Below are positions 46,023 to 54,215 of a stretch of DNA of 64,000 nucleotides, in pieces. Origin of the DNA: Salisapilia sapeloensis CBS 127946 (Eukaryota; Protista; Oomycota); assembly GCA_023334545.1 (NCBI GenBank), contig JAADVB010000020.1:62001-126000 (forward strand). The letters run 5' to 3'. Position 1 is the first letter of the stretch. Each line of letters begins with the position of its first letter. The notes under the pieces were generated by a model, which saw only the letters and a program-made list of their open reading frames with translations, searched no databases and was not told the DNA's origin. The position numbers and the translations under genes were made by a program.

Positions 46023-46126
46023 AGCTACTCGATCCTTTCTAGATAAACTATAGGAAGACTATAGTTTGCAGAAAGATGTAAATTACATTAACACGTACCC
46101 ATTTGACACTCTCGTCGAGTCCAAGC

Positions 46127-48520
46127 ATGGCGCCACGGACGACAGATCTGCAGCAAGTCATTTTGAAGAAAGATGAGATGATTATGCAGCTTCAGACGCA
46201 ATTATCTGCATATGAACGACGATATGGACCTCTCCCGGACGGATGGGACGCACCATCGCCCACTAAAGACAGGAAAAAGCCGTCTGATCCGGATAAAACC
46301 AAGACAAAGTGGGGGAAGATGGGTAGACGGTCTTCTAAATCCTCTCGTGAAGCTAGTAAAGACAAAGAGGAAGGTTCTAGGTCTTTACCACGGCAGAATG
46401 CGTTCACACCAGCACCGGAGCGACCTTCTAGTGGTTCTATAACGAGCAATCGGGAAACTCGTGCTAGTAGCAGTGACAAGAAAGAGGAGATGACTTCTCC
46501 TACGAATGTCGTTTATGGGAAGACCGTCGTACTAGACTTTACCGAGGACTCTCCTATGTTTAGACAACAGATTGATGCGTTCGAAGAATCGATCGGAGGT
46601 CTTCGTACGATGCTCAAGGAGCTTTTAGGTCGTACGAAAGAATACGTCACTGCCGGATCGAAATACGCAGAGGAAGAGGCATCCTTTGCGAATGAGCTTA
46701 CCGATCACAAGTACGCTCGTGCGCTTTTCACCACCACTTGTCCTGAACTCGATAGCCTTGCATCTTTATTCAAACATACGCATGACTTGTTAAAGCAGTT
46801 GGAAGGTTCACGAGAGAGTTTATTCCTCAGTATGGACAGCTCGATCCAGCATTCCATTGGAAAGCTTTCGGAAGACGACATTCGAGACATTAGCGACTTT
46901 CGCAGTCGAGTATCCAAGCTCTCGGACGACTATGAAGCTGGATTAGGCAAGTTGCTAGGTAAAGTCCGTACAACAAGTGGCAGTGGAGGGAACGGCCTGT
47001 CAAATACTACACCTCAGGATCAACAGAAGAGAGGTCCGATGTCCGACACGTTCTCTCCGTCGAATGGGAGTCCAGCGCATCACTCGTCAGACGACATCAC
47101 GTCTATCGCAACGTCATCATCTACGAAAGCGTTAGAAAAGGAAGTTTTGCAACTACGAAGACGCTTTGAAATGGCTCGATTCGACCTCGTTCGATACTTA
47201 AATCGAGTCGAATGTCAGAAGAAACTGAAACTAGTGGAAGGCATCGACTCTGTTCTACATGCCTACTTGACACACTTCCACGTATGTTACGATCTACTGA
47301 AAAAGGCAGAACCAGCATTGAATGAACGACAGCAGATACTTCAAAAGTGTCGACAAGACTTTGAATTAGATGAAAAGATGTGGGAGCAGCAAAGAGCGCT
47401 TTTAGATGATAAATTACAGAGAGATGTAGATACAAGCACTAGTGCAAGCACACTGCCCGAGACTTTCCGTCTACCGATTCATATCGTCGCACATGATTCG
47501 CGACAGTCTCATCATAATGCATCAGGAAGTGTGTCCAAGCAAGGCTACTTGTTCGTTCGTAATACCATGTTTCCAGCACGAAGTTGGAAGCGTCGGTGGT
47601 GTCAGATCCATGCTGGAAAGTTGTATCAGAACCGTGGAAAGCATTTAGAGCTGACGCTCATGTGTGACCTCATGCTATCTCGAGTACGTGAAACGTCCTC
47701 TTCCAACCTACCTTTTTGCTTCGAGGTCATTGATCCGAATAAATCCAAATACTTGCTTCAAGCCACAAGTGATAGGGACAGAGCTGAATGGATTGATGCT
47801 GCTCGTCGCAGCACGGAGAGCATGCTCGAGCAGCAGTCTCTTCGGAAGATGGTACACCCCGACCAGCGTCAGGTGGTACAGGAGCTATTAGATGCAAATC
47901 CTGAATGTGCAGATTGTGGTAACACACCTGCTGAGTGGGTTTCCACCAACATCGGATGTCTTCTTTGTATCGAATGCTCTGGTATTCATCGCAGTCTTGG
48001 TGTCCAAGTGTCGAAAGTGAGGTCATTGACACTCGATTCGTGGGACATGTCACTCCTTGTACTCTTAAAAGACCATCTTGGCAACAAGGTTGTGAATGAA
48101 GTGTGGGAGCAGACGGTACCAAAGGATGCTGTGAAACCAACTCCAGAGTCTTCTAGACAAGAGAAGACCAAATGGATTACAGACAAGTATCACATTCAAG
48201 GGTTCTCGACGGAGTCTCAGTCGACGCAATCGGATGCCACGTCTGAATTGCTACAAGCCGTGGAAGAGGGAAGTGTAAAGCAGATTATGTGGGCAGTCGC
48301 GCATGGTGTTGATGTGAATGCACGCAATGACCGGTTGGAAACAGCGCTGCATATTGCTGCTCGACACGGAAAGAATGCCTGTTGCGAATATCTTCTAGCG
48401 AATGGTGCAGATTCACATGCTGCTGATATCCGTGGGAAGTTTCCATCGAATGCAGCGAAAGAAGGTGGATTTGATGACTTGAGTCTTCTGCTACGACAAC
48501 ATGGCGAGCAACAGACATAA
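46127..48520 (+). CDS. ArfGAP with BAR, PH and ankyrin domains (ACAP/centaurin-beta-like)
   Basis: EDSPMFR (BAR start), SKQGYLF...WKRRW (PH), CADC...WVSTNIGCLLCIECSGIHRSLG..SKVRSLTLD (ArfGAP), ETALHIAA (ankyrin). Confidence 0.93.
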   Translation: MAPRTTDLQQVILKKDEMIMQLQTQLSAYERRYGPLPDGWDAPSPTKDRKKPSDPDKTKTKWGKMGRRSSKSSREASKDKEEGSRSLPRQNAFTPAPERPSSGSITSNRETRASSSDKKEEMTSPTNVVYGKTVVLDFTEDSPMFRQQIDAFEESIGGLRTMLKELLGRTKEYVTAGSKYAEEEASFANELTDHKYARALFTTTCPELDSLASLFKHTHDLLKQLEGSRESLFLSMDSSIQHSIGKLSEDDIRDISDFRSRVSKLSDDYEAGLGKLLGKVRTTSGSGGNGLSNTTPQDQQKRGPMSDTFSPSNGSPAHHSSDDITSIATSSSTKALEKEVLQLRRRFEMARFDLVRYLNRVECQKKLKLVEGIDSVLHAYLTHFHVCYDLLKKAEPALNERQQILQKCRQDFELDEKMWEQQRALLDDKLQRDVDTSTSASTLPETFRLPIHIVAHDSRQSHHNASGSVSKQGYLFVRNTMFPARSWKRRWCQIHAGKLYQNRGKHLELTLMCDLMLSRVRETSSSNLPFCFEVIDPNKSKYLLQATSDRDRAEWIDAARRSTESMLEQQSLRKMVHPDQRQVVQELLDANPECADCGNTPAEWVSTNIGCLLCIECSGIHRSLGVQVSKVRSLTLDSWDMSLLVLLKDHLGNKVVNEVWEQTVPKDAVKPTPESSRQEKTKWITDKYHIQGFSTESQSTQSDATSELLQAVEEGSVKQIMWAVAHGVDVNARNDRLETALHIAARHGKNACCEYLLANGADSHAADIRGKFPSNAAKEGGFDDLSLLLRQHGEQQT

Positions 48521-48597
48521 ACAATTGAATGCAAATTTCATGCAAGTACTGATTCAAGGAGTTAATATAGTTTATCGCTAGTGACACAAAGATTAGA

Positions 48598-51500
48598 TTA
48601 GCCCGATGGAAGGACTTTGCTGTTTGTAGCTTTTCCGGCACGAGGTGTTGAAACCTGCTGTGGTGTCGGTGGCATCTCGGCGGAAGAAATGGGTTGTCGT
48701 GATCGTGGGGTTTCATCCCGATTTGAAGGTAATGCCTCATCATCGACATTTGGCACAATACAAACATCCTTCGTGTTGTCTTCATGAAAACTGACGACAC
48801 TACTCCCTCGCTCTCTGGAAGCGAGTGGAGGCAAAGTTAAAGGTACTTCTAGTAAAAAGCTTTTCATTGGTGCTTTCTCAGGCGCTTGAGAGCTTTGAGC
48901 CGCTTTTTCATTCGAAGTATCGATGCCTATATCGGGTCGAGCAGGCATGACACGAAAGACATCATCATCATTTCTAACCGCGTAGACTTCATCCTCCTCT
49001 AAGTTCTCCAAGTCACTGGTTTTACCTCGCTCTACGGTATTGTCATCCGTCTCCTCGAGTATCTTGGCATCACTATCATTAAGATCTGTACTCGAGAAAA
49101 CACCATCCGCTTCAGCCTTTTGCTTCTTTGCTTTCTCTCGTACATTAATCATAAATTCAACAAACTCCACGACATCAATCTGCCCACTGCCATCCTCATC
49201 CACAACGTCCATCATCTCTCGAAGCTCTGCATGCGTAGGGTGCTTTCCAATTGCAGCCAAACCAATACGAAGCTCTGCTTCCTCGACCGATCCACTGTTA
49301 TCCAGATCAAGTAATCGAAAGACCTTCATAAAGGATGCAACGACCTCTGGATCGATATTCTTACGCTCACGAAGGTCTTCCACACGTTGTATCAACCGTT
49401 TCTCGGCTTCCATCTCTTGCGTTGCTTCCTCCATACTTGTGGTGACCACACCAATGAAGAGCGTGATGAGTACCATACCACCTAAGACGATGAAGGCAAG
49501 AAAGTAGACGATCGCCAGCCAGGTGCCTCCGTCTTTTCCGCAATCGTAACCAAGATCCCGGTACTTTTGATACCCGACGTAATTTTCGCATCCGTAGAAG
49601 TTGATATAAAGCGTATCTGTCCAGCTATCCATTGTCGAGAGTTGGAACAGTGTGATCATAGCATAGTGTAGATATTTAAAGTGGAAAGGATCATTGTCGG
49701 CGAAAAGCATATTGCCAATGATGCCAAACACGTAGAAACACAGCAAGAGAATGAGTCCAATGTAACCAATAGAGCTGACACCTTTCATCAGAGCTGAGAC
49801 AATCACCTGGAGTTGTGGAAATGCTCTCACAAGCTTCAAGACTCGAAGTAGTCGAAGCAGTCGAAGCATCGTGAGCATACCTCCAGATCCTTTTGTAAAA
49901 CTACCAATGACGATGATAAAGTCGAATGTGTTCCATCCTGAGCGAAAGAATGTCCATGGGGCGACACCTTCGGCAACAAGCTTTAGCACTACTTCAGTTG
50001 TGAACACGACCAAAATCGCTGTGTCAATCACATTCAATACGACTGCCACAGCCTCACTAGTGGTTTCAATTGTCTGCAGTCCGACCATAATACCTGCGAG
50101 GACAATGACGCCAGTGATAAACATAGAAAAATGTGGATTCTCTACTAGCTTTCCAGCAGCATTCGACACTAACAAGTACCGGCCTCTTAAGGACGAGTGA
50201 TCTCCCTTCTCCTGTATCAATAAGTCATTCAAGTCGTAGTCTCCCCACGTTTGTCTCAACACTTCCTGCATCTTCATCTGATCTCTCTTCTCCGCAGCCG
50301 ACATATTCTTTGGCTTTAGTTCCTGTTCTTCTTTCTTCATAGTATGACCACCTGACCGCTTTGCTGCGGCTGCCTCTTTCTTCTGGGCTTCAATTGCTCG
50401 TCGTTTGACCTTATCGAGACGTGCTTTTCGTTCCACTTCTTCCTGATTCACCTTCATTTGTTCCATGCTTTGAGTCATACTCATCGTGATAGCACCAATG
50501 AAGAGAGAGAGCATGACGAAGGCCGAGATGAGTACAAAGGTAATGAAAAAGAGCACAGCAAGGACACTGTTCATGACGCGTTGAGTTTCGATACTGGAGA
50601 TAGGGGTATCAGCACCGTAGACGGCAGTGACGTTGCAATATTGATTGTAAATGGCATCGTCCGGGTTGCTCGTGTAGAAACCACCGTTAAAGCGGTCACA
50701 TCCAAAGTAGTTGATATTCATGATCTACACATCCATTAATTTACATGAGTATCCGTACGACAAGTATAGCACATGGATAGGAAGACGTACGTTGGACCAG
50801 TTCTCAAGTGTAGACATGCGAAAGAGTGTGATCATAGCGATGGGGACGTTTCGAAAATGGAACGGATCATTGTCCTGCCACGCATACATGCCAGAGACTG
50901 CATATAAATAAAAAACGAGGAAGAGGAGCAAAAGGATGTATCCGATGGACTTGACGCCTCCAATGAGACCCATAATGATCATGTAGAGCTGCGGCACTCG
51001 TTTGACCAATTTCATTATTCGCAGTAATCGAAAGAGCCGAAGGATGGCAATGTTTCCACCGCCAAGGGCGGATCCCCACATCGGTAGGCTCATGATAATG
51101 ATGGCAAAGTCAAAATTGTTCCAGTGCATCTCTGGACCGATGAAATATCGGAACGGAACCAGACCTTCTGCAAGGATTTTTAAGAGGCATTCAAGGATGA
51201 AGACTGTCAGCACGATATAATCCAAGACATTGAGCACGACATTGTCAGAAAGCTCTGGATACGTTTGTAGACCAACGGAGATACTGGCCCAACAAATACT
51301 AAGCATGACGCTTGAGTTAAACCATTGAGCATTAAGTGCATTGATGGCGAGATTGCAGAGCTGAATATACCGCCGTGCAGTTCCTTGTAGCCCTTTCGTA
51401 CTGAATTTATAGATCCGGTCACTATCCTCATCCTCATCGCCTTCGCCAACGTTGCCAATTTCCTTCGGAACTTGCATCTGCGCTACCGACATCGACATTC

Positions 51501-51672
51501 TCGCACCAATGCCGCGCATTTGACTACTTAATTGCGATACCGAAGATTGCTTGGACAAGGTAGAAGCTACCGGCATGCTCGGAGCACTTACCCCATGCCC
51601 CTCATGGGCAGTAACTTGGGCATCATGGAGCCTCCGCTGCACGGCTCCTCGAGCAGCGATCATCCCAGCCAT
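48598..51672 (-). CDS. Two-repeat (2x6TM) voltage-gated cation channel with C-terminal EF-hand pair, 2 exons
   Basis: Intron 50790-50725 joins ..TLENWSN|IMNINYFGC... S4-I ILRLFRLLRIMKLVKR, S4-II MLRLLRLLRVLKLVRA; pores STLENW and STMDSW; EF-hands DLDNSGSVEEAE and DEDGSGQIDVVE. Confidence 0.9.
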
Positions 51673-51776
51673 GTTGCAAAATCAAGTAGCAATAGGAGCG
51701 GCGAAACAATTAGGAGACGAGAGAACTAGGGCAGCACACCAAGCTGATAGTTACAGATGAAAATATTCGTCCTCAC

Positions 51777-51786
51777 CTATAAATAA
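51777..51786. promoter_or_regulatory. Perfect MEF2 consensus CTATAAATAA (also a TATA box) in the channel/kinase bidirectional promoter
   Basis: Matches YTA(W)4TAR; about 105 bp from the channel ATG and about 145 bp from the kinase ATG. Confidence 0.35.
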
Positions 51787-51929
51787 CTTGGATAAGGCTT
51801 CTACCTGTCTAGCTACGTGCTGTGCTTCCTCTACGTGCAGACCTGACGTACTTTCAATCGGTCAGCATGCTCATCAGATCGAAGAATTGACCGGCTGCAC
51901 AGTTTCTTGGCCATTACCAAATATCGAAG

Positions 51930-54215
51930 ATGGTCCGACATGGTTCGTCGAAGCGAGAGCGGTCTCGCATAGAGCGCGTCTTTCGCGCGCTGTCACAGCC
52001 TTCGGACACCGTCTTCTCTGACCGTGCAAATTCTTCCCCCATGTCGACGCGAACGAGCCTCGACTACGATGGTACTAACAGCCGGCAGACACAATCACCG
52101 TCGCTCGAACGAGTCGACTGGCATGATACGCAAAGGGGAAATGGCGGAGAAGCGGAGGAACATATCTCCTTGGAGCGAATGCGTTCACAGAGGTCTGTTC
52201 GTTTCCTAAGACCAGGCAGGAATACCGTCCAACAGCTTCTGAATCAGAGGTCCAGTAGTGACGATGAGGAGGATGGACATGAAAGCAGTTCACCGTCAGG
52301 AAGGACGATGGAGTCGATTAGTGCGACACTGATGAAACCAGACAAGGAAATCTTCTCGCTCTGGACGGCATACTTTCTAGATAACCATCTCGAAGGCCAG
52401 TATCAGGACTACACGACAGTCCACTGGTTCCCTCGCGCTCGGTGGTACGTTCTATTACTCGTCACGCTGCATTTTTGTGCTTGCGTCTTGCTCTATGCAC
52501 TACCAACAGCTCGGTACGCTGGACTTGTGCTCATCATTCTGTCTCATGACTCCGTCTGGACATGGTGCATGGGCATCTACATGCTCTTTGCATTACCATT
52601 TTCATTACTTCCACGAGCTTTAAACCCATTCCAGTACCGCTGGAGGTCGTGGATCTGCGTCATGCTCATTCTTTTCGTCACCTTCTTCCAGATTTGGCTC
52701 GCGGATGCCAACAAACGAGCATTCGACGTGTATAAAGCTGTCGTAAATCTCATGCTCACATGCAAAGTAGAGGACTGGGCATCTCTCGTGAATGGGGATA
52801 TGACAGGTTTAGGCAATGTGCCTGCGAATATGTCCATTGATATCTCTGGTAGCTTATTGACAGATCTCATCGACGCAGAAGCAAAGCTAGAACAATTATC
52901 CGCGACGCGAGCGGTCCAATTTTTCTCAGATGCATTAGTCAAACTCCTAGCTACCTACACGTCTCTCTTCTCTCTCGTCTTTGCAGCGTCCATCCGACTC
53001 GAGTTCGTCCAAATGACGTTGCTAGGTGTCACATCTCTCACTGCTTACATCGTTATAATGTTCGCATATTCTTTCGAAGTAGAGTACATGTCGACCACAG
53101 CGTTCGTCTTTGGTGTCGTCGCGTCCTGCACTTGGAGTCATGCTTCTGGACGTATCAATCGTCGTTCCTATCTCTCCCATTTTGTTGTCGAAAGAGAGAA
53201 CCTCATGCTACAGTCTATCCTTAGTCAAGCAGAAGCTGAGCTACGGAACGGAGACGCATGTGAAGAAGAACGACAGGTAGTACAGCACGTTTTGAATACG
53301 AGCGACATGCAGCACTTGGCGCTTGTCCACATCGCTTTCTCCGATCTGACGTTCCTCCAAGCTGTTGGAAAAGGGTCCGTGGGAGACGTGATTAAAGCCA
53401 AGTACTTTGGCACAGTCGTCGTCTGCAAACGAATGCGTCGGGAGATGATTACACCAGACGCATTAGCATCCTTCCGTGACGAAATTGAACTCATGGCTTG
53501 TCTCCGTCATCCGAATATCGTCCAGTTCATCGGTGCGAGCTGGGATAACTGTTCTAATCTTTGTATCGTGATGGAGTACTTGGAGAATGGAGACATGCAC
53601 TCGGTACTTCACTCTAGCATCGGTGGTGGATTCACCTGGTCCGACCCGTTGCTAAAAATGGCCATCGATGTCGTTCAAGGCATGCTGTACTTACACTCGC
53701 AAGAAGCTTCGATCGTCCATCGGGACTTGAAATCTGTCAATGTCCTTTGCTCTGCTACCTACGGTTGTAAAGTGGGTGACTTTGGTCTCAGTCGGCGATA
53801 CAGAAAGGATGTCGATGCTCTGAAGACACAAGTCGGAACGCCGTTTTGGCTCGCACCGGAGATTATTCGGAACGAAAACTACGGTTGTTCAGCAGACGTC
53901 TACTCGTTCGGGATCGTCCTGACCGAGTTGGAAACGAGGCAAACGCCGTATCATGATGTCGATGACTCGAGGATGCGAGTGTTGTCAAGAGTCTCGAATG
54001 ACCAACTACGACCTTCGTTGCCGCCAAACACTCCACACGAGCGTCGACAACTAATTAAAGACTGCCTGAAGAATAATCCAGCGGACCGTCCAACCTTTTC
54101 ACAAGTGCTAGCAAGGCTACAAGGTCCGATTTATCGTGAAATCGAAATCCACACAGAACAGGATATGCTCGACCCTCGATTACATCTGCGATCTTCCCAA
54201 GCTCCTGGCAGGTAG
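51930..54215 (+). CDS. Multi-pass membrane TKL-family protein kinase
   Basis: Several TM helices, then VGKGSVG, CK, HPNIVQFIGA, HRDLKSVN, DFGLSR, GTPFWLAPE and DVYSFG. Confidence 0.92.
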   Translation: MVRHGSSKRERSRIERVFRALSQPSDTVFSDRANSSPMSTRTSLDYDGTNSRQTQSPSLERVDWHDTQRGNGGEAEEHISLERMRSQRSVRFLRPGRNTVQQLLNQRSSSDDEEDGHESSSPSGRTMESISATLMKPDKEIFSLWTAYFLDNHLEGQYQDYTTVHWFPRARWYVLLLVTLHFCACVLLYALPTARYAGLVLIILSHDSVWTWCMGIYMLFALPFSLLPRALNPFQYRWRSWICVMLILFVTFFQIWLADANKRAFDVYKAVVNLMLTCKVEDWASLVNGDMTGLGNVPANMSIDISGSLLTDLIDAEAKLEQLSATRAVQFFSDALVKLLATYTSLFSLVFAASIRLEFVQMTLLGVTSLTAYIVIMFAYSFEVEYMSTTAFVFGVVASCTWSHASGRINRRSYLSHFVVERENLMLQSILSQAEAELRNGDACEEERQVVQHVLNTSDMQHLALVHIAFSDLTFLQAVGKGSVGDVIKAKYFGTVVVCKRMRREMITPDALASFRDEIELMACLRHPNIVQFIGASWDNCSNLCIVMEYLENGDMHSVLHSSIGGGFTWSDPLLKMAIDVVQGMLYLHSQEASIVHRDLKSVNVLCSATYGCKVGDFGLSRRYRKDVDALKTQVGTPFWLAPEIIRNENYGCSADVYSFGIVLTELETRQTPYHDVDDSRMRVLSRVSNDQLRPSLPPNTPHERRQLIKDCLKNNPADRPTFSQVLARLQGPIYREIEIHTEQDMLDPRLHLRSSQAPGR

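What the first reader, a model, noticed from the sequence alone, without database searches (positions are those of the whole stretch)
48598..51672. Two-repeat voltage-gated channel with bacterial-Nav/EukCat-like pores and C-terminal EF-hands: candidate 1x to 2x to 4x intermediate
Seen in sequence: splicing out 50790-50725 gives one polypeptide with two 6TM repeats. Both S4 helices keep regularly spaced Arg/Lys. The filters are TLENW and TMDSW, and two canonical EF-hands follow repeat II. Established: single-repeat prokaryotic Nav channels use TLESW-type filters; canonical TPCs have different filters and, in plants, EF-hands in the inter-repeat linker; four-repeat Cav/Nav channels are thought to derive from a two-repeat ancestor. 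Inference: a dimer would present an E/D/E/D ring (Ca2+-permeable) with Ca2+ feedback through the EF-hands. It may be a TPC-independent two-repeat channel class, possibly used in zoospore swimming or encystment.
Basis: partly seen in the sequence, partly recalled or inferred. Interest (0 to 1): 0.8.

Follow-up and report, generated by a model that had tools for sequence, protein, structure and literature searches.

The report
Two-repeat bacterial-type voltage-gated channel gene
This oomycete gene really does encode one protein with two voltage-gated channel units and a calcium-sensing tail, but it is neither a two-pore channel nor a forerunner of animal calcium/sodium channels: it belongs to a separate, undescribed lineage close to bacterial channels that also includes its own four-unit channels.

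Summary
Observation confirmed. On the minus strand, exon 1 (51672-50791), a 66-nt GT..AG intron (50790-50725) and exon 2 (50724-48598) give a 1002-aa protein. RNA-derived contigs from three runs skip exactly those 66 bases, and one 3.3-kb contig carries both repeats. Both repeats have complete S4 charge ladders. The filters are TLENWSN and TMDSWTD, and two canonical EF-hands follow repeat II.

Interpretation partly supported. The protein belongs to a large two-repeat + EF-hand family found in oomycetes, ochrophytes and labyrinthulids, and in dinoflagellate and picozoan data. I found no paper describing it. Its repeats are 31-45% identical to bacterial 'ancestor-like' BacNav channels (NavPp-type TLEDWTD filter) but only distantly similar to Cav/Nav domains. 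TPCs never appear among the nearest structures.

In repeat trees, canonical four-domain channels form their own clade (100/100). The two-repeat family forms another (100/100), together with a set of four-repeat relatives that carry the EF-hands after repeat 2. Grouping repeat I with Cav/Nav domains I/III is rejected (AU p 6e-5). So this is a parallel 1x-2x-4x series, not the ancestor of Cav/Nav.

Not settled: whether 2x gave 4x (favoured, AU borderline), ion selectivity, and any zoospore role. TPC and EukCat sequences could not be retrieved for the trees. The scan's other note on this gene is the same stretch, not other DNA.

The parts
50791..51672 (-). Exon 1: start codon, N-terminal cytoplasmic region, repeat I from S1 to the selectivity filter (aa 1-294)
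   Evidence: ORF; Ion_trans 1.4e-34; covered by RNA contigs
50725..50790 (-). 66-nt intron (GTACGT...TAG), directly after the repeat I filter codons
   Evidence: Sequence; skipped exactly in RNA contigs of X2, X3 and X4; same break implied in 15 other oomycete assemblies
48598..50724 (-). Exon 2: post-filter turret and S6 of repeat I, I-II linker, repeat II, EF-hand pair, C-terminal tail, stop codon (aa 295-1002)
   Evidence: ORF; Ion_trans 2.3e-51 and EF-hand families; RNA contigs
50461..51324 (-). Repeat I (S1-S6, aa 117-382; spans the intron)
   Evidence: HMM and alignment boundaries
50998..51051 (-). S4 of repeat I, RxxRxxRxxKxxKR
   Evidence: Sequence; R/K positions invariant in 44 family members
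50791..50811 (-). Selectivity filter I, TLENWSN
50134..50460 (-). I-II linker: long helical extension of S6-I followed by a low-confidence stretch
   Evidence: AlphaFold model of the orthologue P0007, helix 325-403; alignment
49417..50133 (-). Repeat II (S1-S6, aa 492-730)
   Evidence: 31-45% identical to bacterial single-domain channels over the whole repeat
49825..49875 (-). S4 of repeat II, RxxRxxRxxKxxR
49615..49635 (-). Selectivity filter II, TMDSWTD
49141..49341 (-). EF-hand pair (aa 756-822); Ca2+ loops at 49273-49308 and 49165-49200
   Evidence: Pfam EF-hand_7, EF-hand_1, EF-hand_6; canonical 12-residue loops, conserved in the family
48601..49140 (-). Poorly conserved, probably disordered C-terminal tail ending in the oomycete-conserved K-[IV]-[LIV]-P-S-G
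   Evidence: Alignment; pLDDT about 30 in the orthologue model
51673..51907 (-). 5' untranslated region, with an optional 79-nt (or 61-nt) GT..AG intron at 51726-51804
   Evidence: RNA contigs and low-depth joints

Best explanation
The gene encodes a 1002-aa subunit made of two tandem BacNav-like 6TM units (voltage sensor plus pore). An EF-hand pair sits on the cytoplasmic helix that continues S6 of the second unit.

Inferred mechanism: two subunits pair to form a pseudo-tetrameric cation channel that opens on depolarisation. Both voltage sensors look working, because the gating charges and the charge-transfer-centre residues are invariant across the family. The pore ring is E/D/E/D with no acidic residue at the next position. 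I therefore expect a Na+/Ca2+-permeable or Ca2+-modulated pore rather than a proven Ca2+-selective one. Ca2+ binding to the EF-hands just below the gate would feed back on gating.

Evolution: the protein belongs to a large two-repeat + EF-hand family, mostly in stramenopiles. The family arose by tandem duplication of a single-domain channel of the bacterial 'ancestor-like BacNav' (NavPp, TLEDWTD) type. This happened independently of the duplications that produced TPCs and canonical four-domain Cav/Nav channels. The same lineage contains four-repeat channels whose halves are each other's nearest relatives and which keep the EF-hands after repeat 2. Most likely these arose by doubling of the two-repeat unit.

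Shown here: gene model, transcript, domain anatomy, family, and tree topology with tests. Inferred: dimer assembly, voltage gating, Ca2+ feedback, selectivity, and the direction 2x to 4x.
For: Gene and transcript.

Domains and motifs.

Family: about 170 listed relatives (the searches found several hundred), almost all with two repeats and most with EF-hands after repeat II. They come from oomycetes, Triparma/Bolidomonas, Phaeomonas, Paraphysomonas, Hondaea, Ectocarpus, Durusdinium and Picozoa.

Nearness to bacterial channels:
- Repeat II is 31-45% identical over its whole length to single-domain channels on contigs of Planctomycetota (928 kb), Nitrospinota (two independent genomes), Polyangiaceae and Gammaproteobacteria.
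- Against an HMM of the window's own two repeats, bacterial channels score 90-240 bits and Cav3 domains 40-84 bits.
- They share the pore LFR..TLEDWTDIMY, an indel-free 28-aa stretch from the end of S5 through the pore helix, and the post-filter turret YGC..YGY..C.
- TLEDWTD is the filter of NavPp and of the predicted ancestral BacNav (PMC7041947).

Trees:
- Canonical domains I-IV form a clade, 100/100.
- The eukaryotic 2x+4x clade has 100/100, with a repeat-I type group at 100/99 and a repeat-II type group at 96/82. The bacterial sequence L003 is sister at 99/88.
- Larger quick trees give the same groups, as do trees from the voltage sensor alone and the pore alone.

AU tests: repeat I held with domains I/III is rejected (p 5.8e-5). 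All four-repeat proteins held together are rejected (p 0.002).

Four-repeat relatives:
- Two are single uninterrupted ORFs on metagenome contigs, and one has a TSP1-repeat neighbour, which is eukaryotic.
- The EF-hands lie in the II-III linker.
- Concatenated halves are sisters, 100/99.

Structure: the TM core of the orthologue model has pLDDT above 85, and both S6 helices continue as long cytoplasmic helices as in BacNavs. The nearest shapes in the ESM Atlas are bacterial one-domain channels and one-domain + EF-hand proteins, not TPCs.
Against: - No TPC, EukCat or CatSper sequences could be retrieved, so they are absent from the trees. Exclusion of TPC rests on motifs, EF-hand position and rankings of structures and sequences.
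- Canonical domains sit on long branches, so long-branch attraction could exaggerate their separation, even though a site-heterogeneous model was used and two independent modules agree.
- Monophyly of the bacterial sequences is not rejected (AU p 0.19). Nesting inside bacteria, and hence gene transfer, is therefore not shown.
- The direction 2x to 4x is only favoured. Single-repeat AU tests do not reject the alternatives (p 0.43 and 0.50). With concatenated halves they are borderline (p 0.065 and 0.058).
- There are no functional data. NavPp, which has the family's consensus filter, is Na+-permeable and blocked by Ca2+, and the oomycete filters differ from that consensus.
- The structure model is of a 64-77% identical orthologue, as a monomer.
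Confidence: 0.68

Rival explanations
1. It is a surviving two-repeat intermediate on the direct line from single-domain channels to canonical four-domain Cav/Nav channels.
For: It has two repeats and T-x-[ED]-x-W filters. An EF-hand pair follows the last S6, as in the C-terminal domain of Cav/Nav. Foldseek aligns the model preferentially with the second half (domains III-IV plus C-terminus) of Cav/Nav. PDB sequence searches put four-domain channels on top because four domain scores add up.
Against: Canonical domains I-IV form one clade that excludes both repeats (100/100). Holding repeat I with domains I/III costs 87 log-likelihood units, AU p 5.8e-5. Neither repeat has the glycine signature of domains I/III or the long S5-P turrets. 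The two repeats are 40% identical to each other, far closer than either is to any Cav/Nav domain.
Confidence: 0.1
2. It is a divergent two-pore channel (TPC).
For: It has the same gross architecture, two 6TM repeats in one chain with a presumed dimer. EF-hands occur in plant and diatom TPC1. Feature-based Atlas look-alikes include TPC1 clusters at 0.91-0.92. Earlier surveys listed 'TPCN homologues' in some Phytophthora species (PMC4820453), and these may include this family.
Against: The filters carry E/D in T-x-[ED]-x-W, whereas TPC second-repeat filters are VNN, MGN or VND (PMC11085791). The EF-hands lie after repeat II and not between the repeats. No TPC appears in the top 60 PDB sequence hits, where BacNavs reach 1e-38. 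None appears in the top 50 Foldseek or VIA-align PDB hits, the top 30 Swiss-Prot models or the Atlas shape neighbours. Both voltage sensors are fully charged.
Confidence: 0.04
3. The two-repeat genes are fission or truncation products of the four-repeat relatives (as in the aphid two-subunit sodium channel), so 4x came first in this lineage.
For: The four-repeat relatives carry the EF-hands after repeat 2, so cutting there would give exactly repeat I-repeat II-EF. AU tests do not firmly reject two-repeat + first half (p 0.43 with single repeats, 0.065 concatenated) or two-repeat + second half (p 0.50 and 0.058). Fission of a four-domain channel is documented in aphids (PMC4332693).
Against: The best trees make the two halves of the four-repeat proteins sisters: 99/91 and 85/80 per repeat, 100/99 concatenated. 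The alternatives are about 21 log-likelihood units worse. Two-repeat forms are much more numerous and more widely spread across taxa than four-repeat forms.
Confidence: 0.15

Closest known systems
Ancestor-like prokaryotic BacNavs (AnclNav: NavPp of Plesiocystis pacifica, CavMr of Meiothermus ruber; PMC7041947)
   Same: Closest in sequence: 31-45% identity over a whole repeat. They share the same S1-S6 plan, an indel-free stretch from S5 through the pore helix, the family consensus filter TLEDWTD (identical to NavPp), the SM[ED]EA motif and a long helix after S6, and in some bacterial members the same Cys-containing post-filter turret.
   Different: The bacterial proteins are single 6TM subunits that form homotetramers and end in a coiled coil. 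Here two units are fused in one chain, an EF-hand pair has been added, and in the oomycete protein the filters have diverged to TLENWSN and TMDSWTD.
Two-pore channels (TPC1-3, diatom TPCL)
   Same: Two 6TM repeats in one chain, presumably working as a dimer. Ca2+ regulation through EF-hands occurs in plant and diatom TPC1.
   Different: The filter chemistry differs (an acidic T-x-[ED]-x-W against Asn-based filters). The EF-hands are C-terminal, not in the inter-repeat linker. Both S4 segments are fully charged. TPCs are not among the nearest sequences or structures.
[quoted passage not shown]
   Same: Same superfamily and the same T-x-[ED]-x-W pore. The internal history has the same (I,III)(II,IV) pattern as the four-repeat relatives of this family. 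In both, an EF-hand module follows the last S6.
   Different: They form a separate clade (100/100; AU p 5.8e-5 against union). Canonical channels have long S5-P turrets and asymmetric filters. Per-domain similarity to the window's repeats is 40-84 bits, against 90-240 bits for bacterial channels.
EukCat single-domain channels of diatoms, haptophytes and dinoflagellates (PMC6509283)
   Same: Eukaryotic BacNav-like voltage-gated Na+/Ca2+ channels in the same broad groups of protists.
   Different: EukCats are single-domain. According to PMC10120453, EukCatA lacks the residue after the high-field-strength site. The relationship was not tested because no EukCat sequence could be retrieved.
Two-repeat tandem Kv-like and CNBD channels of oomycetes, dinoflagellates and chlorarachniophytes (PMC7576140)
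   Same: The same phenomenon, tandem fusion of two 6TM channel units in one chain, in the same organisms. In both cases first and second repeats form separate clades.
   Different: Those are K+-channel and cyclic-nucleotide-gated families. That paper does not report a Nav/Cav-type (BacNav-like) tandem.
Aphid heterodimeric sodium channel (H1/H2; PMC4332693)
   Same: Two-repeat subunits that together make a four-repeat pore.
   Different: The aphid subunits are recent fission products of a canonical Nav. The present family is ancient, widespread and not nested in canonical channels.

Membership tests
Two-pore channels (TPC) | Two 6TM repeats in one polypeptide | tested here: met
   Two Ion_trans domains on one spliced mRNA
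Two-pore channels (TPC) | Asn-based selectivity filters without an acidic ring (second-repeat motif VNN, MGN or VND) | tested here: not met
   The filters are TLENWSN and TMDSWTD. TPC motifs are taken from PMC11085791.
Two-pore channels (TPC) | EF-hands, where present, lie in the linker between repeats I and II | tested here: not met
   The EF-hand pair is at aa 756-822, after S6 of repeat II
Two-pore channels (TPC) | Repeats I and II group with TPC repeats I and II in a phylogeny | not testable with these tools
   No tool returned a TPC sequence. Indirect evidence only: TPCs are absent from the nearest PDB, Swiss-Prot and Atlas hits.
Canonical four-domain Cav/Nav (FVCC), or a half of one | Repeat I groups with domains I/III and repeat II with domains II/IV | tested here: not met
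   Canonical domains form their own clade, 100/100. The constrained tree is rejected, dlnL 87, AU p 5.8e-5.
Canonical four-domain Cav/Nav (FVCC), or a half of one | Long extracellular S5-P turrets and asymmetric filters (Gly after E/D in domains I/III) | tested here: not met
   The stretch from S5 through the pore helix is 28 aa in both repeats, as in bacterial channels, against 36-76 aa in a Cav. Neither repeat has the glycine.
BacNav / ancestor-like BacNav (AnclNav) | Whole-length similarity of a repeat to prokaryotic single-domain voltage-gated channels, with a T-L-E-x-W type filter | tested here: met
   31-45% identity over aa 6-253 of repeat II; 90-240 bits. The family consensus TLEDWTD equals the NavPp filter.
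BacNav / ancestor-like BacNav (AnclNav) | Single 6TM subunit forming a homotetramer | tested here: not met
   Two repeats in one chain. It works like a concatenated BacNav dimer but is not a member in the strict sense.
BacNav / ancestor-like BacNav (AnclNav) | C-terminal neck and coiled coil after S6 | tested here: inconclusive
   Both S6 helices continue as long helices (79 and 54 residues in the orthologue model), and the SM[ED]EA motif is shared with bacterial tails. No bundle could be modelled.
EukCat single-domain channels | Single-domain eukaryotic BacNav-like channel; clade membership | not testable with these tools
   The architecture differs (two repeats). No EukCat sequences could be retrieved for a tree.
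Unnamed two-repeat + C-terminal EF-hand family (stramenopile-centred) | Repeat I-repeat II-EF-hand pair; repeats fall in the repeat-I type and repeat-II type clades; Cys-containing post-filter turret in both repeats | tested here: met
   (C292/C313 and C666/C681 invariant)

The most novel reading that the evidence does not exclude
Eukaryotes built multi-repeat voltage-gated cation channels twice. Besides the TPC and Cav/Nav line, a second line started from an ancestor-like BacNav-type single-domain channel, possibly acquired from bacteria. It fused to a two-repeat, EF-hand-bearing channel (this gene's family) and then doubled again to a four-repeat channel that still keeps the EF-hands in its II-III linker. 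All three stages survive today and remain 35-45% identical to one another.
Probability: 0.5. Interest if true: 0.85.

Novelty: new variant of a known kind. Interest (0 to 1): 0.74.

Why it matters
How four-domain Cav/Nav channels arose from single-domain ancestors is an old question, argued mostly from TPCs as the only two-repeat stage. TPC repeats are only distantly similar to Cav/Nav domains.

Here the one-, two- and four-repeat stages all exist today and are still close in sequence. Questions that have been out of reach become experimentally testable in a natural series:
- what fusion does to assembly;
- how the repeats specialise;
- how selectivity changes when a homotetrameric ring becomes E/D/E/D;
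- how a C-terminal Ca2+ sensor ends up as an inter-domain linker.

The result also cautions that surveys counting every four-repeat channel as one family, or every two-repeat channel as a TPC, may be mixing independent inventions.

For oomycete biology it adds a conserved, expressed, probably Ca2+-regulated excitability channel with no close relative found among animal or plant sequences in these searches.

Tried and rejected
1. P0042, an MMETSP transcript with three repeats, first looked like a 2x-to-4x link. Its repeats match two different Triparma-type paralogues (82% to P0045 repeat I, 73% to P0069 repeat II, with a hybrid middle repeat). I treat it as an assembly chimera and dropped it as evidence.

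2. TPC, EukCat and CatSper sequences could not be obtained. Every search returns only its best 120-150 hits and these are filled by the family itself or by four-domain channels. Sequences printed in papers or PDB alignments were not retyped.

3. Global superposition of the monomer model on solved channels is poor (TM 0.22-0.25, rmsd about 27 A), because the relative placement of the two repeats in a monomer prediction is arbitrary. I used only the ranking, together with the VIA-align Z-scores.

4. Nesting of the eukaryotic clade inside bacterial diversity (gene transfer from bacteria) appears in every tree, but AU does not reject bacterial monophyly (p 0.19). I do not claim it.

5. The direction 2x to 4x is not resolved by AU tests on single repeats and is borderline on concatenated halves.

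6. One scan of viral contigs for relatives found none.

7. The first representatives job was lost on the remote machine and was run again.

8. Seven full-text searches and eleven papers searched for key terms gave no description of this family. The library lacks most subscription journals.
Full report
GENE MODEL. Two adjacent minus-strand ORFs, 51672..50725 (315 aa) and 50721..48598 (707 aa), are separated only by a stop-containing stretch. That stretch begins GTACGT and ends TGTAG. Removing 50790..50725 (66 nt, a multiple of three) joins them into a 3009-nt reading frame for 1002 residues.

The splice is not just plausible. Four small RNA-type runs hold 96-98% of the sampled words of this stretch. 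When their contigs are laid on 48200-52000, three runs each have a contig with the joint 50724|50791, 'skips 66, CT..AC' on the + strand. The X2 contig is 3308 nt and covers 48534-51907, so both repeats lie on one mRNA. The fourth run has an unspliced fragment that ends inside the intron. Contigs stop where the neighbouring genes stop, which shows transcripts rather than genomic DNA.

The spliced protein aligns without a gap through the junction with full-length orthologues of Phytophthora, Pythium and Plasmopara, and shares their start (M..AAR.A) and their last residues (K-[IV]-[LIV]-P-S-G). Fifteen ORF-called proteins from other oomycete assemblies begin at MNINYFGCD, exactly where exon 2 begins here. 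The intron just after the repeat I filter is therefore probably shared by other oomycetes.

ANATOMY. Pfam finds Ion_trans in exon 1 (aa 116-293, cut at the filter by the intron) and in exon 2. It also finds an EF-hand pair 26-92 residues after S6 of repeat II.
- S4-I has RxxRxxRxxKxxKR and S4-II has RxxRxxRxxKxxR.
- The filters are TLENWSN and TMDSWTD.
- The EF loops DLDNSGSVEEAE and DEDGSGQIDVVE are canonical.
- In an alignment of 44 family members, the S4 charges of both repeats are invariant. So are the S2 F..E...K and S3 WN.FD residues of the charge-transfer centre, the filter T and W, and two cysteines in each post-filter loop.
- An AlphaFold model of the Pythium orthologue (64% identical overall, 74-77% in the repeats) has pLDDT above 85 throughout both 6TM units. 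Both S6 helices continue as long cytoplasmic helices (79 and 54 residues), the second running into the EF-hand pair. The N-terminus, the middle of the linker and the last 160 residues are disordered.

THE FAMILY. The first search returned 400 proteins at E <= 1e-10. The window protein is 54-68% identical to oomycete orthologues and 35-50% identical to proteins of Triparma/Bolidomonas, Phaeomonas, Paraphysomonas, chrysophytes, Ectocarpus and Hondaea. A protein filed under the dinoflagellate Durusdinium and one under Picozoa also belong. Counting repeats with an HMM of the window's own repeats shows two repeats in practically all of them, and most carry the EF-hand pair. Sources name them 'voltage-gated sodium channel', 'EF-hand domain-containing protein' or 'hypothetical'. 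I found no paper that describes the family. Earlier surveys of oomycete Ca2+ channels count 'VGCC', 'TPCN' and 'CatSper' homologues by BLAST and may have included it. Studies of four-domain channels, EukCats and diatom channels do not mention it. Two-repeat tandem channels have been reported in oomycetes and dinoflagellates, but for Kv-like and CNBD channels.

WHAT IT RESEMBLES. The two repeats are 40% identical to each other (152 bits). Against solved structures, four-domain Cav/Nav chains rank first only because four domain scores add up. Single domains give 33-66 bits, whereas one BacNav chain gives 133 bits with repeat II. TPCs are not among the 60 best.

A scan of bacterial and archaeal genomes found 14 single-domain channels that are 31-45% identical to repeat II over essentially its whole length. 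They lie on contigs of Planctomycetota (928 kb), two independent Nitrospinota genomes, Polyangiaceae, Gammaproteobacteria and others. They are 270-310 aa long and have the usual BacNav helical tail without EF-hands. Against the window's repeat HMM they score 90-240 bits, while Cav3 domains score 40-84.

The pore stretch LFR..TLEDWTDIMY is shared by most family members and by these bacterial proteins. TLEDWTD is exactly the filter of NavPp from the myxobacterium Plesiocystis pacifica, a member of the 'ancestor-like BacNav' group, and of the predicted ancestral BacNav (PMC7041947). The 28-residue stretch from the end of S5 through the pore helix has no indels among the two-repeat proteins, their four-repeat relatives and the bacterial channels, whereas it is 36-76 residues in a Cav. 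The cysteine-containing post-filter turret YGC..YGY..C occurs in both repeats and also in the Nitrospinota and Polyangiaceae proteins.

FOUR-REPEAT RELATIVES. Searching with longer family members brought up proteins of 1500-2080 aa with four repeats, each scoring 130-234 bits against the window's repeat HMM. Two of them are single uninterrupted ORFs on metagenome contigs (5253 and 5004 nt). A third sits beside a TSP1-repeat protein, so the owner is a eukaryote. Their organisms are not named. In three of them the EF-hands lie after repeat 2, in the II-III linker, the same position relative to repeat II as in the two-repeat proteins. One has in addition a cyclic-nucleotide-binding domain there, and another a C-terminal PH domain.

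PHYLOGENY. To sample canonical four-domain channels widely, I searched the 1.84-billion-protein library with a protist four-domain channel. Of the best 150 hits, 124 had four complete repeats, and I picked 11 from different clusters (Cav1/2-like, Cav3-like and nine protist types).

Repeat trees (LG+C20 PMSF) of 121, 118 and 71 rows agree. In the careful 71-row tree:
- canonical domains I-IV form a clade (100/100), with (I,III) at 98/94 and (II,IV) at 100/95;
- all repeats of the two- and four-repeat relatives form another clade (100/100);
- that clade splits into a repeat-I type group (two-repeat RI with four-repeat R1 and R3; 100/99) and a repeat-II type group (RII with R2 and R4; 96/82);
- bacterial sequences lie between the two eukaryotic clades, with the Polyangiaceae protein sister to the 2x+4x clade (99/88).

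The voltage-sensor half (111 columns) and the pore half (123 columns) each recover these groups on their own.

AU tests:
- holding repeat-I type sequences together with canonical domains I/III costs 87 log-likelihood units, p 5.8e-5;
- holding all repeats of all four-repeat proteins together costs 72 units, p 0.002;
- bacterial monophyly is not rejected, p 0.19.

The two-repeat family is therefore not on the line to Cav/Nav and arose by its own duplication. Whether its single-domain ancestor came from bacteria by transfer or was an old eukaryotic gene is open.

DIRECTION WITHIN THE LINEAGE. In the repeat trees R1 is sister to R3 (99/91) and R2 to R4 (85/80). When repeats are concatenated into half-units (474 columns, rooted on bacteria), the two halves of the four-repeat proteins are sisters (100/99) within or beside the two-repeat proteins. 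This favours doubling of a two-repeat + EF-hand unit followed by loss of the second EF-hand pair. The AU tests are weaker. On single repeats the alternatives are not rejected (p 0.43 and 0.50). On concatenated halves they are about 21 units worse, with p 0.065 and 0.058. I put 2x to 4x at about three in four, and fission of a four-repeat gene at about one in six.

TPC. I could not place TPC repeats in the trees. What was tested:
- the filters are of the acidic T-x-[ED]-x-W kind, not the Asn-based TPC kind;
- the EF-hands are C-terminal, not in the inter-repeat linker;
- both S4 segments are fully charged;
- no TPC appears among the 60 best PDB sequence matches, the 50 best Foldseek or VIA-align PDB matches, the 30 best Swiss-Prot models or the shape neighbours in the ESM Atlas. 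The Atlas shape neighbours are instead bacterial one-domain channels and one-domain + EF-hand proteins.

Feature-based Atlas look-alikes do include plant TPC1 clusters at 0.91-0.92, which I read as shared architecture.

FUNCTION (inferred). The anatomy is that of a depolarisation-activated cation channel formed by two subunits.

Selectivity cannot be read off the sequence. The family consensus filter is that of NavPp, which conducts Na+ and is blocked by external Ca2+ rather than selecting Ca2+. In one-domain channels without an acidic residue after the high-field-strength site, glutamate goes with Na+ selectivity and aspartate with non-selective Na+/Ca2+ permeation (PMC10120453).

The EF-hand pair on the helix that continues S6-II is well placed to couple internal Ca2+ to the gate.

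The gene is transcribed in all four runs. In Phytophthora infestans, calcium-channel transcripts as a class rise strongly in spores, but nothing gene-specific was available.

SURROUNDINGS. The neighbours are an ordinary BAR-PH-ArfGAP-ankyrin gene, convergent with the channel gene, and a membrane-anchored Ser/Thr kinase gene, head-to-head with it. I see no functional link.

VERDICT. It is wrong that this is a stage on the road to Cav/Nav. The more interesting reading, that it belongs to a second, parallel 1x-2x-4x lineage, is well supported for its independence from Cav/Nav and moderately supported for the direction of change. It still needs TPC, EukCat and CatSper in the tree.

Noticed in passing
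window 51726-51804 (minus strand): Low-depth RNA contigs in runs X1 and X3 skip 79 nt (or 61 nt, 51744-51804) with GT..AG ends in the channel's 5' untranslated region. This looks like an optional 5'UTR intron. The X2 contig keeps these bases.
   Followed up: partly
window 51901-51930: The channel mRNA contig ends at 51907, and contigs of the head-to-head kinase gene (ATG at 51930, + strand) begin at 51901-51928. The two divergent transcripts therefore abut or overlap by a few bases, which leaves almost no intergenic promoter.
   Followed up: partly
window 48534-48547: The 3' ends of the channel mRNA and of the convergent BAR-PH-ArfGAP-ankyrin gene (46103-48520, +) meet within about 10 nt. Contigs end at 48536-48542 on one side and begin at 48534-48597 on the other.
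   Followed up: partly
window 51930-54215 (+): A 761-aa protein with a multi-pass membrane N-terminal half and a Ser/Thr (TKL-like) kinase domain (Pkinase 6e-55). It is the head-to-head neighbour of the channel gene.
   Followed up: partly
P0172, P0171 (four-repeat relatives, metagenome / EukProt): One four-repeat relative has a cyclic-nucleotide-binding domain as well as EF-hands in its II-III linker. Another has a C-terminal PH domain. The four-repeat branch has picked up further regulatory modules.
   Followed up: no
L002, L003, L004 (Nitrospinota and Polyangiaceae contigs): These bacterial single-domain channels carry the same cysteine-containing post-filter turret (MYxxxYGCxxYGY...C) as the eukaryotic repeats. 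Other bacterial relatives (L005, L009) have a short loop. This marks a specific bacterial subgroup as nearest kin, or a gene transfer in one direction or the other.
   Followed up: partly
ESM Atlas clusters: Clusters of 348-387-aa eukaryotic proteins (ciliates named) combine one Ion_trans unit with EF-hands. They could be single-repeat members of the same lineage, or fragments. Their sequences could not be retrieved.
   Followed up: no
P0042 (MMETSP transcript, 1000 aa): This three-repeat 'protein' is best explained as a transcriptome-assembly chimera of two bolidophyte paralogues joined in the conserved pore region.
   Followed up: yes
window 48601-48618 (last six codons): The otherwise unconserved C-terminal tail ends in K-[IV]-[LIV]-P-S-G in all oomycete orthologues compared, preceded by a basic R-x-R-S-G-R-like patch. 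It may be a targeting or binding motif.
   Followed up: no
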